From the sequence record OP953026.1: a stretch of DNA of 64,000 bases. One strand, given 5' to 3'. Each line of letters starts with the position of its first letter. Position 1 is the stretch's first letter. A program made the position numbers and the translations under genes. This document shows, in pieces, positions 6,473-34,426 of the stretch. The notes beneath the pieces are model-generated. The model did no database searches. It worked only from the letters and a program-made list of their open reading frames with translations, and was not told where the DNA came from.

Positions 6473-8716
6473 ATGAGCGTACATGCCCTAAGAGAACTGT
6501 TTAAACACAAAGGCGAAAAGAATTACGAAGTCTTCTCAATGGAAGATTTCATTGGCCGCCTAGAAAGTGAAATTGGTCTAAATGACAGCGTTGTTAGTCA
6601 AGGTCGTTCCCTTATTAGCAGCATTTCACATGAAAACTTCGGTACCGTGCAAGCTACCGACATTCAAGATGCCGCTGCAATTTATAACAAAATGCAAATG
6701 CTCGTTAACGACTATGGTTTCGAACGAGTAAGTTCCAGTGATCCTCAAGTACGTGCTCGTGAAGAACGTGTCCGTGAGAACCAAATCACTGCTGCTACCA
6801 TGGCTGCTATCGCCTGTGCTGATGAAACTAAATATATCCGTGCACTACGTGGTATTACCAAAGCTAAAGCTTCTAATGAAGATCATGTTAAGGTTGTACA
6901 GCATCAGTTCAATGGCCCTGCTGGTGGCATTCAAGTATTCGAAAATGGTGTTGGCCTAGAGAACTATAACGAGAAGTCACAGCGTGATTTCCGTGTTGTA
7001 ACTATTGGTTATAACCTAGCTGCTAGCCGTCAGGATGAATTCGCTGAGCGTATCTATCCGACCACCGTTATCAACCCGATTGAAGGTGGTGTTGTTCAGG
7101 TTCTTCCTTACATCGCTGTAATGAAAGACGTTTACCACGAAGTATCCGGCGTTAAGATGGATAACGAAGAAGTGAACATGGTAGAAGCCTATCGTGATCC
7201 TTCCATCCTCGACGACGAAAGCATTGCACTAATTCCTGCCCTAGATCCGGCTGGTTCCAATGCTGACTTCTTCGTAGACCCGGCTCTTGTTCCTCCGTAC
7301 ACCATCAAGAACGAGCAGAACCTAACTATCACTACTGCTCCGCTAAAAGCGAACGTACGTCTTGATCTAATGGGTAACTCCAATGCTAACCTACTCATTC
7401 AGCGTGGCATGCTTGAAGTTTCTGACACCATTGATCCGGCTGGTCGTCTAAAGAACCTATTCGTTCTACTCGGCGGTAAAGTTGTTAAGTTCAAGGTTGA
7501 CCGTCTACCTCGCGCTGTGTTCCAGCCCGATCTAGTTGGTGATACCCGGAACGCAGTTATCCGTTTCGATAGCGATGACCTTGTTGTTAGTGGCGATACC
7601 ACTTTCATCGACGGTTCAGCTGATGGCGTTATTAACGACCTTAAGACTGCTAAACTAAGCCTACGTCTAAGCGTTGGTTTTGGTGGTACTATCAGCCTAT
7701 CCAAAGGCGATTCTAAGTTTGGTGCTACCGACACTTACGTCGATAAAGTTCTAAACGAAGATGGCCAGGTAATGGATAATGCTGACCCGGCTGTTAAAGC
7801 TATTCTAGATCAGCTAACTGACCTAGCTGTTATCGGTTTCGAACTAGATACTCGCTTCACCAACACTAACCGTCGTCAGCGTGGTCACCTACTACAGACC
7901 CGTGCACTACAGTTCCGTCATCCGATCCCGATGCACGCTCCTGTAACTCTACCGATGGACACCATGACCGATGAAGGTCCGGGTGAGGTTGTTAAAGCTC
8001 TAACTGTTAACACCAACATCCGTAACAGCAACAACGCTGTTAAGCGCATGCTTAACTACCTTGCTCAACTACGTGAAGTTGTACACAATGGTTACAACCG
8101 TCCGAAGTTTGGTATCATCGAAGGTGCACTATCCGCTGTAATGCGTCCGACCTATCGTTACAAAGAACTAGATCTTGAGAAAGTCATCGACACCATCAAG
8201 TCTAAAGATCGTTGGGACGACGTTTGCGCTGCGATCCTAAACTGTGTTAAAGCTGAGCTATTCCCGGCTCACCGTGATTCCAACATTGAAGCTGCCTTCC
8301 GTGTTATCTCCGGTAACCAGGATGAAACTCCGATGTATCTCTTCTGCTCCGACAAAGAGATTGCTAACTATCTAATGACTAAAGGTGACGACCGTACTCT
8401 AGGTGCTTATCTCAAGTACGATATCGTTTCCACCAACAACCAGCTATTTGATGGTAAGCTAGTTGTAATTCCGACCCGCGCAGTACAACAAGAAAACGAC
8501 ATCCTCTCCTGGGGCCAGTTCTTCTACGTATCTACTGTTATCGCTGACCTACCGATCACTCGTGGTGGTCACCAGGTTACTCGCGAAATCGCGGCCATTC
8601 CGTTCAACCTACACGTCAACAACATTCCGTTCGCGCTAGAGTTCAAGATCACTGGCTTCCAGAAAGTCATGGGCGAAACTCAGTTCAACGGTAAGCTTGC
8701 TGATCTTAAGCCGTGA
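6473..8716 (+). CDS. gp120: major capsid protein (phiKZ gp120)
   Basis: 747 aa; GLE at residues 161-163 fits the known prohead-protease cleavage; highly-expressed codon usage; TGA stop. Confidence 0.95.
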   Translation: MSVHALRELFKHKGEKNYEVFSMEDFIGRLESEIGLNDSVVSQGRSLISSISHENFGTVQATDIQDAAAIYNKMQMLVNDYGFERVSSSDPQVRAREERVRENQITAATMAAIACADETKYIRALRGITKAKASNEDHVKVVQHQFNGPAGGIQVFENGVGLENYNEKSQRDFRVVTIGYNLAASRQDEFAERIYPTTVINPIEGGVVQVLPYIAVMKDVYHEVSGVKMDNEEVNMVEAYRDPSILDDESIALIPALDPAGSNADFFVDPALVPPYTIKNEQNLTITTAPLKANVRLDLMGNSNANLLIQRGMLEVSDTIDPAGRLKNLFVLLGGKVVKFKVDRLPRAVFQPDLVGDTRNAVIRFDSDDLVVSGDTTFIDGSADGVINDLKTAKLSLRLSVGFGGTISLSKGDSKFGATDTYVDKVLNEDGQVMDNADPAVKAILDQLTDLAVIGFELDTRFTNTNRRQRGHLLQTRALQFRHPIPMHAPVTLPMDTMTDEGPGEVVKALTVNTNIRNSNNAVKRMLNYLAQLREVVHNGYNRPKFGIIEGALSAVMRPTYRYKELDLEKVIDTIKSKDRWDDVCAAILNCVKAELFPAHRDSNIEAAFRVISGNQDETPMYLFCSDKEIANYLMTKGDDRTLGAYLKYDIVSTNNQLFDGKLVVIPTRAVQQENDILSWGQFFYVSTVIADLPITRGGHQVTREIAAIPFNLHVNNIPFALEFKITGFQKVMGETQFNGKLADLKP

Positions 8717-8797
8717 GCTGGAAAGGGTTACCGTTATCTAGAAAATGGGACTATCCGTTATTTGGAAGACGGTAATGCCCGGAAGTTAGAAGAGTAA
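8717..8797 (+). other. in-frame 26-codon extension after the capsid TGA (candidate readthrough product)
   Basis: GCT GGA AAG GGT TAC CGT TAT CTA GAA ... GAA GAG TAA = AGKGYRYLENGTIRYLEDGNARKLEE; no start codon before the motif; terminator 9 nt after the TAA. Confidence 0.75.
8732..8761 (+). repeat. 30-nt exact repeat, copy 1 (copy 2 at 34385-34414)
   Basis: CGTTATCTAGAAAATGGGACTATCCGTTAT. Confidence 0.95.
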
Positions 8798-8806
8798 CAG
8801 ACATAG

Positions 8807-8826
8807 GCCCTCCCTTCGGGGAGGGC
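8807..8826 (+). terminator. capsid operon terminator hairpin
   Basis: GCCCTCCC-TTCG-GGGAGGGC flanked by CATA and TATG. Confidence 0.85.
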
Positions 8827-8835
8827 TTTATGTTG

Positions 8836-8871
8836 TATTACATTAAAAAAAGTTTAAGATCTATATTACAG
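8836..8871 (+). promoter_or_regulatory. early (vRNAP) promoter
   Basis: A7-GTTTAAGATC-TATATTAC; phiKZ early consensus TATATTAC; 35/36 nt identical to 60544-60579. Confidence 0.85.
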
Positions 8872-8912
8872 TAATGATCATGATCTTCTAATTTAAAAAT
8901 AGGTTAATTCAA

Positions 8913-15024: not shown

Positions 15025-15468
15025 TTAACTACTTTCAAATTCAAGAGTTACTGGTATTGTTGGTATCCACGACAAGTTATTAAAGTATGGATGTATCGTA
15101 ACCGTATTCCCAGTAATAGGTTGCGGTTGTATCTCATCTATAATAAATGGAATACCGTAAACATCTCTTAATTTTTCAGCTACTTCTAAATTATCAGTAT
15201 AGTCAGTTGGTTTACCCGGTACCTTTATGCCAAGACAGTACTCTGGTAAAGAGCGTCTATTAAAGTAAATAACTGCCTCACCTTTAAAATAAAGTGAACT
15301 GGTCTTCGCTCTCATTGTTGTTTTGGCATTTGTACCAGTTGCTAAGAATGTATCGGTTCCTATGAATTCAACATCATCAACAGTTAAATCCCTAGGCCTA
15401 CCATTATTATCTTTAGGTTTATTAGCCACATTCCAAGCAGCTACCAATTCAGCTCTTGTATCAGCCAT
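15025..15468 (-). CDS. virion structural protein (gp126-like), member of the gp126/127/143/158 paralogue family
   Basis: GAGGTG SD; shared two-lobe motif pattern; synteny. Confidence 0.8.
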   Translation of the reverse strand: MADTRAELVAAWNVANKPKDNNGRPRDLTVDDVEFIGTDTFLATGTNAKTTMRAKTSSLYFKGEAVIYFNRRSLPEYCLGIKVPGKPTDYTDNLEVAEKLRDVYGIPFIIDEIQPQPITGNTVTIHPYFNNLSWIPTIPVTLEFESS

Positions 15469-15476
15469 TACACACC

Positions 15477-16352
<876 letters not shown>

Positions 16353-33892: not shown

Positions 33893-34426
33893 ATGCAGGA
33901 TATCTTTCCGTATGACATGGCATCGAGGGACGCGCTAGTAAAACTTGCGCGGGATGATTTAAAAATAAACTTCAAACCAGAAACAGTTACATTTGAAGAT
34001 ATGTTTTTTAGTCCAACCACGATTGAGCCTGGACGTACATTTATTGAAATGATCGACATTACTACTGACATTAAGTACATGTTAACTTACCGTCGGTTAG
34101 ATTTTGCTGATCCACGAGCTATTGGTGAAGGATCTATCCTTAAGATAGTTGGTACTTTAACACCTAAAGCAATTGCTGAAGAAATCAACCGTTCACGGGG
34201 TTGGAAGCTTGGACCAGATGATGTTTCATTTGATACAACACCAATCAATGCAACTACGGATGTTGTTCCATACACGATAGTAGCTATGTCGAGTAGTTAT
34301 GCTTACTATGGTGAATGTAATATACTAATTCAACGTATTGATGATACATCGGATACTATCCGGCTATTAGAGAATGGCGCAGCACGTTATCTAGAAAATG
34401 GGACTATCCGTTATCTAGAAAGTTAA
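33893..34426 (+). CDS. virion structural protein (gp143-like) ending in a 3x RxLE[N]G tag
   Basis: GAGG SD; gp126/127-type body; C-terminus RLLENGAARYLENGTIRYLES. Confidence 0.88.
   Translation: MQDIFPYDMASRDALVKLARDDLKINFKPETVTFEDMFFSPTTIEPGRTFIEMIDITTDIKYMLTYRRLDFADPRAIGEGSILKIVGTLTPKAIAEEINRSRGWKLGPDDVSFDTTPINATTDVVPYTIVAMSSSYAYYGECNILIQRIDDTSDTIRLLENGAARYLENGTIRYLES
34385..34414 (+). repeat. 30-nt exact repeat, copy 2 (copy 1 at 8732-8761)
   Basis: CGTTATCTAGAAAATGGGACTATCCGTTAT, same peptide frame (RYLENGTIRY). Confidence 0.95.

What the first reader, a model, noticed from the sequence alone, without database searches (positions are those of the whole stretch)
8708..8826. Probable programmed UGA readthrough of the major capsid protein adding a 26-aa repeat tag
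Seen: after ...AAG CCG TGA the same frame continues as GCT GGA AAG GGT TAC CGT TAT CTA GAA AAT GGG ACT ATC CGT TAT TTG GAA GAC GGT AAT GCC CGG AAG TTA GAA GAG TAA. This encodes AGKGY-RYLENGTI-RYLEDGNA-RKLEE, three 8-residue RxLE[ND]Gxx units behind a small linker. No start codon precedes the motif, so it can only be made as a fusion. The terminator sits 9 nt after this TAA, with the TAA-ca..CATA-hairpin spacing seen after real stops elsewhere, but 90 nt after the TGA. Most genes here end in TAA, and TGA mostly appears where it overlaps a downstream start or SD, which is not the case here. Known: capsid C-terminal extensions by recoding exist (T7 10A/10B frameshift; Qbeta coat UGA readthrough). 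Inference: a minority of capsid subunits (774 aa before processing) carry this tag. I do not recall this being described for phiKZ.
Basis: partly seen in the sequence, partly recalled or inferred. Interest (0 to 1): 0.95.

Follow-up and report, generated by a model that had tools for sequence, protein, structure and literature searches.

The report
Leaky-stop tail on jumbo-phage capsid protein
The phiKZ major capsid gene ends in a UGA stop followed in frame by a short, evolutionarily protected tail. That tail copies the C-terminal tail of a virion filament protein, so a share of capsid subunits very probably carries it through stop-codon readthrough, a feature not annotated or described before.

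Summary

- **Protein-level conservation.** All 25 distinct phiKZ-clade relatives that carry the tail keep the frame open for 24-30 codons. Indels are multiples of three, pN is below pS, and the invariant R/E/G residues use several synonymous codons.
- **The stop is tied to the tail.** Of 72 distinct chimallivirus MCP ends, 33 have TGA plus a tail and 37 have TAA and no tail, with two exceptions. The base after TGA is never T. The second stop varies freely.
- **The tail is a known protein module.** It matches the conserved C-terminal tail of gp143, a DUF7941 virion protein.
- **Independent repeat.** In Goslar (MCP 28% identical) the post-UGA tail carries an unrelated motif, yet it again copies that phage's own gp143 counterpart, gp23.

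Rival readings (RNA element, separate gene, selenocysteine, dead remnant) fit poorly.

The likely function is a capsid-surface docking peptide for DUF7941 filament proteins. This is inferred, not shown. No peptide or ribosome-footprint evidence exists yet, and I found no prior description.

The parts
6473..8713 (+). Major capsid protein gp120 coding sequence (747 codons)
   Evidence: ORF list and RefSeq annotation. The published cryo-EM model covers residues 164-747. The C-terminal arm 728-747 sits at the capsomer centre and touches the outer decoration protein gp244 at pentons (PMC11297242).
8714..8716 (+). UGA stop codon, proposed leaky (recoded) stop; the following base is G
   Evidence: TGA in 25 of 25 distinct tail-bearing phiKZ-clade relatives and in 33 of 34 tail-bearing chimallivirus MCP ends. 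The next base is A, G or C and never T. Tail-less MCPs use TAA.
8717..8794 (+). 26-codon in-frame extension AGKGYRYLENGTIRYLEDGNARKLEE with no start codon of its own
   Evidence: Translation. Frame conserved at 24-30 codons in relatives, indels in multiples of three, pN 0.33 against pS 0.64, invariant R/E/G encoded by 2-5 synonymous codons. Unannotated in every phiKZ-species record listed (47 match at >=99%).
8732..8755 (+). Repeat 1, RYLENGTI
   Evidence: Lies within a 30-nt run (8732-8761) identical to the gp143 tail.
8756..8779 (+). Repeat 2, RYLEDGNA
8780..8794 (+). Repeat 3, truncated, RKLEE
   Evidence: Eight phiKZ-species isolates match the peptide only over residues 1-25; in the one examined, KEN49, GAG is changed to TAG at the last codon, trimming only the final E.
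8795..8797 (+). TAA, the real end of the extended product
   Evidence: In relatives this second stop varies: TAA 16, TGA 5, TAG 4.
8718..8782 (+). Predicted RNA hairpin spanning the extension; a possible readthrough stimulator, status uncertain
   Evidence: MFE -29.6 kcal/mol, z = -3.4. All 21 clade extensions fold better than shuffles, mean z about -2, against -0.65 for MCP coding windows. There is no positionally conserved or covarying structure.
8805..8828 (+). Intrinsic terminator hairpin of the MCP transcript, downstream of the extension
   Evidence: Terminator scan. Compensatory base changes across genera.
33893..34426 (+). gp143, 177 aa, a DUF7941-type virion protein. Its C-terminal tail (34361-34423, RLLENGAARYLENGTIRYLES) is the paralogous copy of the motif.
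   Evidence: BLASTP of the extension against gp143 residues 157-176: 13/20 identical, E = 2e-7. It is the only significant non-self hit in the six-frame window, E = 6e-9. Tail residues R157, E160, R165, E168 and R173 are invariant in 22 family members. In the AF2 model the domain 1-149 is confident and the tail has pLDDT about 72. The only Foldseek hit is a phiKZ baseplate chain, 9xqd.
15025..16349 (-). gp126 (15025-15468) and gp127 (15477-16349), the other DUF7941 proteins of phiKZ; candidate docking partners
   Evidence: Pfam PF25613: gp127 E = 1e-27, gp126 E = 5e-9. Head-to-tail docking of DUF7941 proteins is predicted in bioRxiv 10.64898/2026.04.21.720040.

Best explanation
A fraction of ribosomes translating the phiKZ MCP mRNA decode the UGA at 8714-8716 instead of terminating. 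The most likely route is near-cognate tRNA, with Trp as the textbook case in Gram-negative bacteria. These ribosomes continue for 26 codons to the TAA at 8795, giving a 774-aa MCP variant.

The added tail is a short linker followed by three RxLE(N/D)G-type units. It is the same module as the C-terminal tail of the gp143 family, which aligns with the linker that follows the N-terminal domain in full-length DUF7941 proteins. The MCP C-terminal arm lies at the capsomer centre and contacts an outer decoration protein at pentons. The tail would therefore protrude from the outside of a minority of capsomers.

Inferred function: it acts as a docking peptide that lets DUF7941 proteins (gp143, possibly gp126 and gp127), or whatever partner binds the gp143 tail, attach to the capsid. 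A leaky stop sets the dose. No relative has the tail fused through a sense codon, which suggests that putting a tail on every subunit is not tolerated.

Status of each step:
- Shown by sequence comparison: the extension is a protein-coding module selected at the amino-acid level, it is tied to a UGA stop, it lacks its own start, and it is homologous to a real protein tail.
- Inferred: the recoding mechanism, its efficiency, the outside location, and the docking function.
For: 1. Conservation. The post-stop frame is open for 24-30 codons in all 25 distinct tail-bearing sequences of the Pseudomonas phiKZ clade, which spans 59-100% MCP identity. The other two frames are open for only 1-48 codons. 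Indels are multiples of three.
2. Selection. pN is 0.33 and pS is 0.64 summed over pairs. HPP-Temi and PS119XW differ by 4 synonymous and 0 non-synonymous changes. Invariant R, E and G are encoded by 2-5 different codons, including CGN and AGR for Arg.
3. The stop. The first stop is TGA in 25 of 25, while the second is TAA 16, TGA 5, TAG 4. Among 68 distinct MCP ends, 32 are TGA with a tail, 34 TAA with none, 1 TAA with a tail and 1 TGA without; Fisher p = 6e-17, uncorrected for phylogeny. Four further phages fit the rule. Sister taxa differ in step: L048 has TGA and a tail while L050 has TAA and none; L041 contrasts with L040 and L042 in the same way. The base after the stop is A23/G6/C3/T0 with a tail and T18/G9/C5/A2 without.
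4. No in-frame ATG, GTG or TTG among the first codons shown for any of the 25 extensions.
5. Homology to a real protein tail: gp143 family.
6. Independent instance. The Goslar MCP has TGA followed by 28 codons, TTVAASLDDILDDNVADGFIAPDIHPAP. This matches the tail of Goslar gp23 (DUF7941, next to the endolysin, as gp143 is), E = 4e-6, and gp23 is the best non-self hit in 32 kb. The shared DNVADGF is encoded with 4 synonymous differences.
7. Further lineages. PCH45 and SPLA10 (48 and 55 codons, 56% identical), 2050HW and RP12 also have TGA followed by a related ..L.GF..P tail.
8. Tails align with the DUF7941 linker. That linker is predicted to dock on the next protomer's N-terminal domain (bioRxiv 10.64898/2026.04.21.720040).
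9. The MCP C-terminus lies at the capsomer centre and touches outer protein gp244 (PMC11297242).
10. None of 120 MCP cluster representatives has the tail fused without a stop.
Against: - There is no direct evidence of the product. No MS peptides or ribosome footprints could be examined, and the cryo-EM models stop at residue 747.
- UGA readthrough efficiency in Pseudomonas is unknown.
- No conserved stimulatory RNA structure was found.
- One relative, L046, has a tail (Big_2 domain plus RxxEDG) behind TAA, not TGA.
- Within the Pseudomonas clade an MCP tail is no more similar to its own phage's gp143 tail than to those of other phages (permutation p = 0.96). Co-variation is therefore seen only between distant clades.
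- gp143-like tails also exist in phages whose MCP has no extension.
- gp143 has been reported as a cytoplasmic lysis regulator and as non-essential (PMC12894885; bioRxiv 10.1101/2025.11.23.690004). That does not obviously fit a capsid-fibre role.
- The tree-based test of correlated change has too few independent pairs to reach significance: 3-4 concordant, 0 discordant, p = 0.125.
Confidence: 0.8

Rival explanations
1. The conserved stretch is an RNA element of the MCP 3' UTR, for example a stabilising or regulatory hairpin or a 3'-derived small RNA. On this view the open frame is incidental.
For: The phiKZ extension folds into a strong hairpin (-29.6 kcal/mol, z = -3.4). All clade extensions fold better than shuffles, with mean z about -2 against -0.65 in coding controls.
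Against: There is no consensus structure and almost no covariation across 8 or 22 sequences. By contrast, the neighbouring terminator shows clear compensatory changes. Variation is greatest at third codon positions, conserved residues use multiple codons, and indels are multiples of three. The peptide is homologous to a real protein tail. An RNA element would not require TGA in particular. No Rfam family matches.
Confidence: 0.05
2. The extension is translated as a separate micro-protein of about 26 aa, by reinitiation or a non-canonical start after MCP termination, rather than as a fusion.
For: Translational coupling is common in phages. The extension sits inside the highly expressed MCP mRNA.
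Against: There is no in-frame ATG, GTG or TTG among the first codons shown for any of the 25 sequences, and no conserved Shine-Dalgarno sequence. The motif frame is always the MCP frame, starting directly after the stop. A separate gene would not need the upstream stop to be TGA, nor would it explain the switch to TAA whenever the tail is lost. In gp143 and gp23 the module works as the C-terminal tail of a larger protein.
Confidence: 0.05
3. The UGA is recoded by a dedicated mechanism other than near-cognate readthrough: selenocysteine insertion, a phage-encoded suppressor tRNA, or late-infection reprogramming that makes readthrough efficient. In that case most or all MCP copies would carry the tail.
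For: The UGA is strictly conserved. A hairpin starts about 8-12 nt after the UGA in several lineages. The cryo-EM models cannot distinguish the two cases, because a flexible tail would be invisible.
Against: There is no conserved SECIS-like stem-loop. Hosts span Pseudomonas, Escherichia, Serratia, Salmonella and Ralstonia. No tRNA gene lies in the window, although the rest of the genome was not scanned. Other phiKZ genes end in TGA. If every subunit needed the tail, a sense codon would be expected in at least some of the 120 relatives, and none has one.
Confidence: 0.08
4. The extension is a decaying remnant: an ancestral MCP C-terminal tail cut off by a nonsense mutation, or a chance copy of the gp143 tail.
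For: In phiKZ itself the extension and the gp143 tail share a 30-nt identical run, consistent with recent copying.
Against: The arrangement persists across lineages whose synonymous sites are saturated (pS 0.4-0.9), with pN below pS and an intact frame. It is present in at least five named genera plus metagenomic lineages. A second motif type shows the same architecture in distant phages. Remnants do not keep a specific stop codon.
Confidence: 0.02

Closest known systems
Qbeta A1 (readthrough) protein: UGA readthrough of the coat gene of an ssRNA coliphage (from established knowledge)
   Same: A leaky UGA at the end of the major coat gene. An in-frame extension with no start of its own. A minority of coat subunits would carry a C-terminal extension exposed on the virion.
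   Different: Qbeta is a small ssRNA phage and its extension is a roughly 195-aa domain needed for infection. Here the host is a 280-kb dsDNA jumbo phage with an HK97-fold capsid, the tail is 24-30 aa (up to 55, or 95-203 with an Ig-like domain in some relatives), and it mimics the tail of another virion protein. The product has not been shown experimentally.
Capsid C-terminal extensions made by programmed frameshifting in dsDNA phages: T7/T3 10A/10B; Listeria phages PSA, A118 and A500 (from established knowledge)
   Same: Two forms of the major capsid protein from one gene, the longer one being a minor species carrying a surface-exposed C-terminal addition.
   Different: Those use -1 or +1 frameshifts at slippery sites. 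Here the extension is in the zero frame directly after a stop codon, so no frameshift is required.
Ig-like domains appended to phage structural proteins by recoding (Fraser et al. 2006, J Mol Biol; from established knowledge)
   Same: In two metagenomic relatives the in-frame post-stop ORF encodes a Big_2 Ig-like domain: L041 behind TGA, 203 aa, Pfam E = 4e-9; L046, 95 aa, E = 5e-7, followed by the RxxEDG tail.
   Different: phiKZ itself has only the short repeat tail. The described cases use frameshifts, not stop readthrough.
DUF7941 (PF25613) head-to-tail filament proteins of chimalliviruses: Goslar gp22 and gp23; phiKZ gp126, gp127 and gp143 (bioRxiv 10.64898/2026.04.21.720040)
   Same: The MCP tail has the sequence of the gp143 or gp23 tail. 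[quoted passage not shown]
   Different: The MCP has no DUF7941 globular domain. It would only present the docking peptide. The preprint places the filament anchor at the peripheral baseplate and does not mention the capsid protein or readthrough.
Luteovirus/polerovirus CP-RTD and other plant-virus coat readthrough proteins (from established knowledge; reviewed in PMC3542737)
   Same: Coat-protein stop readthrough gives a minor virion component that mediates interactions with other partners.
   Different: Those are eukaryotic RNA viruses using UAG or UGA with eukaryotic stimulators and long readthrough domains.

Membership tests
Programmed stop-codon readthrough of a coat gene (Qbeta A1 type) | The coat ORF ends in a leaky stop codon (UGA) in a weak termination context | tested here: met
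   TGA in 25 of 25 clade sequences and in 33 of 34 tail-bearing MCP ends. The next base is A, G or C and never T. Tail-less MCPs mostly use TAA followed by T.
Programmed stop-codon readthrough of a coat gene (Qbeta A1 type) | A downstream ORF in the zero frame, with no initiation codon of its own, conserved as coding sequence | tested here: met
   Frame open for 24-30 codons in all sequences, indels in multiples of three, pN below pS, synonymous codon variation at invariant residues, and no in-frame start among the first codons shown.
Programmed stop-codon readthrough of a coat gene (Qbeta A1 type) | The extended protein is detected, at a defined ratio to the normal product | not testable with these tools
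   No proteomic or ribosome-profiling data were accessible. No phiKZ Ribo-seq study turned up in the library.
Programmed stop-codon readthrough of a coat gene (Qbeta A1 type) | A cis-acting stimulator, either sequence context or downstream RNA structure | tested here: inconclusive
   Extension RNAs fold better than shuffles in every lineage, but there is no conserved, covarying structure.
DUF7941 linker / gp143-type C-terminal tail | Sequence similarity to the conserved tail R-x-[LM]-E-x-G-x-x-R-x-x-E-x-G-x-x-R-x-L-E of gp143-family proteins | tested here: met
   BLASTP 13/20 identical, E = 2e-7. Unique significant six-frame hit. Same invariant R/E/G pattern. Across 50,697 phage records the peptide matches only phiKZ-like Pseudomonas phages, at the MCP extension and/or the gp143-like tail, two places per phiKZ-species genome.
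DUF7941 linker / gp143-type C-terminal tail | The tail binds the N-terminal domain of a DUF7941 protomer (head-to-tail docking) | not testable with these tools
   Only single-chain prediction was available. Docking is an AlphaFold prediction in the Goslar preprint. In the AF2 monomer of gp143 the tail has moderate confidence, pLDDT about 72.
DUF7941 linker / gp143-type C-terminal tail | The MCP tail tracks the tail of the same phage's short DUF7941 protein | tested here: inconclusive
   Met between distant clades: RxLExG in phiKZ and DNVADGF in Goslar, each matching its own gp143 or gp23. Not met within the Pseudomonas clade (permutation p = 0.96). In PCH45 the tail resembles the C-terminus of a 781-aa protein encoded next to a DUF7941 gene, E = 0.004.
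Selenocysteine (SECIS-directed) UGA recoding | A conserved SECIS stem-loop directly 3' of the UGA | tested here: not met
   No conserved stem-loop or covariation. No Rfam hit.
Programmed ribosomal frameshift capsid extension (T7 10B type) | The extension lies in the -1 or +1 frame and is reached from a slippery site | tested here: not met
   The extension is in the zero frame directly after the stop. The other frames are not conserved.

The most novel reading that the evidence does not exclude
Readthrough MCP subunits are the capsid-side anchors, or seeds, of head-to-tail DUF7941 chains. The tail protruding from a capsomer centre would dock into the N-terminal domain of gp143 (gp23 in Goslar). 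That protein's identical tail would recruit the next protomer, so the leakiness of one stop codon would set the number of fibres per head. This would explain why Goslar virions carry about 2,100 copies of gp23, more than the MCP copy number, although only six baseplate anchor sites have been proposed. It would also make UGA readthrough a conserved assembly device across several Chimalliviridae genera, with at least two motif dialects.
Probability: 0.35. Interest if true: 0.9.

Novelty: new variant of a known kind. Interest (0 to 1): 0.85.

Why it matters
phiKZ is the model nucleus-forming jumbo phage, and its capsid has been solved and mass-analysed repeatedly. Even so, this 78-nt coding segment is unannotated in every phiKZ-species record listed (47 match at >=99%).

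If confirmed, it would be the first conserved stop-codon readthrough that I could find reported in a capsid gene of a dsDNA tailed phage. It would add a new virion component, MCP with a tail, in at least five Pseudomonas phage genera. Analogous cases appear in Goslar, PCH45, SPLA10, 2050HW and probably RP12.

It also gives a concrete, testable answer to an open question from 2026 structural work, namely where and how the very abundant DUF7941 filament proteins attach to the virion.

Practical consequences:
- Proteomic search databases and genome annotations for these phages should include the extended form.
- The MCP C-terminus behind a leaky stop is a natural low-copy display site for phage engineering.

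Tried and rejected
- **Conserved RNA structure or SECIS.** RNAalifold on 8 and on 22 sequences gave no consensus and negligible covariation. Rfam gave nothing near threshold. Rejected as the primary explanation. Per-sequence folding is nonetheless better than shuffles, so a stimulatory role stays open.
- **Fine-scale co-evolution of the MCP tail with the gp143 tail.** Tested in 13 phages. Own-phage scores were no higher than cross-phage scores, so I dropped that claim.
- **Natural fusions with TGA replaced by a sense codon.** I looked among 120 MCP cluster representatives and found none.
- **PCH45 184-aa protein as a gp23 homologue.** Neither Pfam nor BLASTP supports this. Only the 781-aa neighbour's C-terminus matches the PCH45 extension, and weakly.
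- **Database-wide tblastn with the short Goslar and PCH45 tails.** Too insensitive to find paralogous tails.
- **Phylogenetically corrected test of TGA against tail.** Too few independent contrasts for significance: 3-4 concordant, 0 discordant.
- **Annotated small ORFs overlapping the extension** in HPP-Temi and Viktualia. They lie in other frames, and those frames are not conserved.
- **Supplementary transcript-end tables** of the phiKZ ONT-cappable-seq paper. Not held in the library.
- **Pfam on the 26-aa peptide alone.** No hit.
Full report
**1. Observation**

The window is phiKZ: window 8300-8900 equals AF399011 120095-120695 at 100%. [quoted passage not shown] The same frame continues as AGKGYRYLENGTIRYLEDGNARKLEE and then TAA at 8795-8797. 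A G+C-rich terminator hairpin lies at 8805-8828. The only corrections are spacings: 7 nt from the TAA to the stem and 88 nt from the TGA.

Taken alone, a 26-codon open frame after a stop is unremarkable in this genome, since 26% of 42 genes have one. The motif is not unremarkable. R.[LM]E[NDE]G occurs four times in all six frames of the 64 kb, twice here and twice at the C-terminus of gp143.

**2. Conservation**

blastn of the region aligned well past the MCP stop in phages only about 73% identical. An alignment of phiKZ with HPP-Temi and PS119XW (Pawinskivirus), Phabio, 201phi2-1 and Psa21 showed three things: an invariant TGA, a post-stop frame that stays open, and indels of 3 nt.

I widened the sample with GenBank records and IMG/VR contigs. 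This gave 25 distinct extension sequences in the Pseudomonas phiKZ clade, reaching down to Noxifer-like phages at 59-62% MCP identity.

- All have 24-30 codons with the pattern R-x-x-E-(D/N)-G-x-x-R-x-x-E-x-G-x-x-R-x-L-E.
- The other two frames are open for anything from 1 to 48 codons.
- Summed over pairs, pS is 0.64 and pN is 0.33. This is weaker constraint than in the last 100 MCP codons (0.50 and 0.13), but it is clearly purifying.
- The closest pair differs by 4 synonymous and 0 non-synonymous changes.
- The invariant Arg, Glu and Gly are spelled with 2-5 different codons, including CGN and AGR for Arg.

This is selection on a peptide, not on an RNA.

**3. The stop codon**

The first stop is TGA in 25 of 25 sequences, whereas the stop that ends the extension varies (TAA 16, TGA 5, TAG 4).

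Inside the same clade, MCPs that lack the tail end in TAA followed by short random frames. On an MCP tree these cases are interleaved. L048 (TGA, tail) is sister to L050 (TAA, none). L044 (TAA) sits beside the Noxifer group (TGA, tail). L041 (TGA) sits beside L040, L042 and L043 (TAA).

Over 68 distinct MCP 3' ends from across the Chimalliviridae, the counts were:

| First stop | Tail | No tail |
|---|---|---|
| TGA | 32 | 1 |
| TAA | 1 | 34 |

Fisher p is 6e-17, not corrected for phylogeny. Four further phages obeyed the rule. The paired-contrast test has too few contrasts to reach significance, with 3-4 concordant and 0 discordant.

The base after the stop is A23/G6/C3/T0 when a tail follows and T18/G9/C5/A2 when none does. 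From established knowledge of E. coli termination, a U after the stop gives the strongest signal and UGA is the leakiest stop.

None of 120 MCP cluster representatives has the tail joined by a sense codon. The stop is therefore kept whenever the tail is kept.

**4. What the tail is**

gp143 (window 33893-34426, 177 aa, annotated as a virion structural protein) ends RLLENGAARYLENGTIRYLES. In an alignment of 22 gp143-family proteins, down to 32% identity, the tail residues R157, E160, R165, E168 and R173 are invariant.

The MCP extension aligns to gp143 residues 157-176 with 13 of 20 identities, E = 2e-7. This is the only significant non-self hit among all six-frame segments of the window: E = 6e-9, with the next hit at 0.2. 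Across 50,697 phage records the peptide matches only phiKZ-like Pseudomonas phages, at the MCP extension and/or the gp143-like tail, with two places per phiKZ-species genome. The extension is unannotated in all 47 phiKZ-species genomes.

gp143 has the DUF7941 N-terminal fold:
- weak Pfam match;
- AF2 model with a confident domain 1-149 and a tail at pLDDT about 72;
- a single Foldseek hit, a 150-residue chain of the phiKZ outer baseplate, 9xqd.

The tails of gp143 and Goslar gp23 align with the linker that follows the N-terminal domain in the full-length DUF7941 proteins gp127, Goslar gp22 and a PCH45 protein. [quoted passage not shown] It also shows that Goslar gp22 forms filaments, and it estimates about 2,140 copies of gp23 per virion (bioRxiv 10.64898/2026.04.21.720040).

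**5. Independent instances**

Goslar's MCP is only 28% identical to gp120 over the compared part. It also ends in TGA, followed by 28 in-frame codons (TTVAASLDDILDDNVADGFIAPDIHPAP), a stop and a terminator. Goslar gp23 lies next to the endolysin, as gp143 does, and ends ..QLATVLADNVADGFVKPTVSVVG. The two match with E = 4e-6, and gp23 is the best non-self hit in a 32-kb six-frame scan. The shared DNVADGF is encoded with four synonymous differences, so it is not a recent copy. The same architecture therefore recurs with an unrelated motif.

Further cases:
- PCH45 and SPLA10 have TGA-C followed by 48 and 55 codons that are 56% identical to each other, beginning LSEIFKDEVLDGFALPA.
- 2050HW has TGA followed by TLAEAFEETLPGFDPA.
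- RP12 has TGA followed by 15 codons containing DGF.
- The PCH45 tail resembles the C-terminus of a 781-aa protein encoded just upstream of a full DUF7941 gene, but only weakly, E = 0.004.
- In two metagenomic relatives the in-frame post-stop ORF begins with a Big_2 Ig-like domain. This recalls the known habit of phages of appending Ig-like domains to structural proteins by recoding.

**6. Rival explanations**

- **RNA element.** The phiKZ extension folds well (z = -3.4). All lineages fold somewhat better than shuffles or coding controls. A stimulatory hairpin remains possible. An RNA-only explanation does not.
- **Separate gene.** There is no start codon and no reason for the upstream stop to be TGA.
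- **Selenocysteine or suppressor tRNA.** There is no SECIS-like element, the hosts are very diverse, and no tRNA lies in the window.
- **Remnant.** This is excluded by selection across saturated divergence.

**7. Mechanism proposed**

Shown by comparison: a coding, start-less, zero-frame module that is tied to UGA and homologous to a real protein tail.

Inferred:
- Near-cognate decoding of UGA gives a minority of 774-aa MCP.
- The tail emerges on the outside. In hexons the C-terminal arms form a six-helix bundle around a 9-Å pore at the hexon centre. In pentons they contact gp244 on the outer surface (PMC11297242).
- There the tail offers the same docking peptide as gp143, so DUF7941 proteins, or the unknown partner of the gp143 tail, can attach to the head.

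Confidence is about 0.8 that an extended MCP is made by recoding at this UGA, and about 0.4 for the docking function.

**8. Caveats**

- There is no protein-level evidence.
- L046 carries Big_2 plus the tail behind TAA.
- There is no within-clade co-variation of the MCP and gp143 tails.
- gp143-like tails exist in phages without an MCP tail.
- gp143 is also reported as a non-essential, holin-binding lysis regulator (PMC12894885; bioRxiv 10.1101/2025.11.23.690004).
- In phiKZ itself the 30-nt identity with gp143 shows recent copying. The phiKZ pair alone would therefore be weak evidence. The case rests on the relatives.

**9. Novelty**

Full-text searches combining phiKZ, jumbo phage or chimallivirus with readthrough, UGA or recoding found no description. 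The capsid, whole-virion, Goslar and transcriptome papers do not mention it.

Coat-gene readthrough is a known kind of system, as in Qbeta A1 and the plant-virus CP-RT proteins. Capsid extensions in dsDNA phages are known through frameshifting, as in T7 10B. This is a new variant: UGA readthrough in an HK97-fold jumbo-phage capsid gene, adding a mimic of another virion protein's tail, conserved over several genera.

Noticed in passing
window 8842-8869: ATTAAAAAAAGTTTAAGATCTATATTAC lies just 3' of the MCP terminator and is nearly invariant across five genera. A similar AAAAAATTTGAC..TTACATTAC follows the Goslar terminator. It looks like the conserved chimallivirus early (virion RNA polymerase) promoter driving gp121.
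   Followed up: no
window 8824-8832: GGCTTTATG, directly after the terminator stem, is invariant in all genera compared. The TATG resembles the reported phiKZ late-promoter core, so the terminator may double as a late start site.
   Followed up: no
window 8732-8761 and the gp143 tail near 34385-34414: A 30-nt identical run, CGTTATCTAGAAAATGGGACTATCCGTTAT, is shared by the MCP extension and the gp143 tail (34 of 36 nt over RYLENGTIRYLE). This indicates recent gene conversion or copying between the two loci in the phiKZ lineage.
   Followed up: partly
L046 1583-1870 (IMGVR_UViG_3300037502_002993): The MCP ends in TAA-C, yet the frame continues for 95 codons: a Big_2 Ig-like domain plus the tail LRLTEDGEMRTTEDGTPRYSEL. 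There is no convincing start codon. This is an exception to the TGA rule and remains unexplained.
   Followed up: partly
L041 1568-2179 (IMGVR_UViG_3300043122_000192): The MCP TGA is followed in frame by a 203-aa ORF with a Big_2 domain (Pfam E = 4e-9). An ATG at codon 3 means a separate decoration gene cannot be excluded.
   Followed up: partly
L001 974-1117 (HPP-Temi XCP73898.1); L015 1387-1485 (Viktualia XYH46012.1): These are annotated 'hypothetical protein' ORFs that overlap the MCP end and extension in other reading frames. Those frames are not conserved, so the calls are probably spurious.
   Followed up: partly
L111 (KEN49) position corresponding to window 8792: Eight phiKZ-species isolates match the extension only over residues 1-25. 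In the one examined, KEN49, GAG is changed to TAG at the last extension codon, shortening the tail by one residue to ...RKLE, the ending seen in several other genera.
   Followed up: yes
proteins P0084-P0174 (MCP homologues): MCPs that lack the tail often end in low-complexity Thr/Gly/Asp/Pro-rich stretches of 10-30 residues. This fits a solvent-exposed, evolvable C-terminus.
   Followed up: no
window 15025 and 33893 versus NC_004629 (L006): Gene coordinates drift by +1 and then -5 nt relative to the RefSeq phiKZ record, and PA7 gp143 reads ..NGQIRYLES where the window has ..NGTIRYLES. The window therefore carries small indels and differences compared with NC_004629.
   Followed up: no
L110 44339-48164 (PCH45): Three adjacent genes stand out. 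A 781-aa protein ends ..LEQTFQDESLSGFGLND. Next comes a full DUF7941 protein of 289 aa. Then a 184-aa protein ends ..EGTFPGDDLSGFDQPASA. Two of the three therefore carry the L.GF tail motif also found after the PCH45 MCP UGA.
   Followed up: partly
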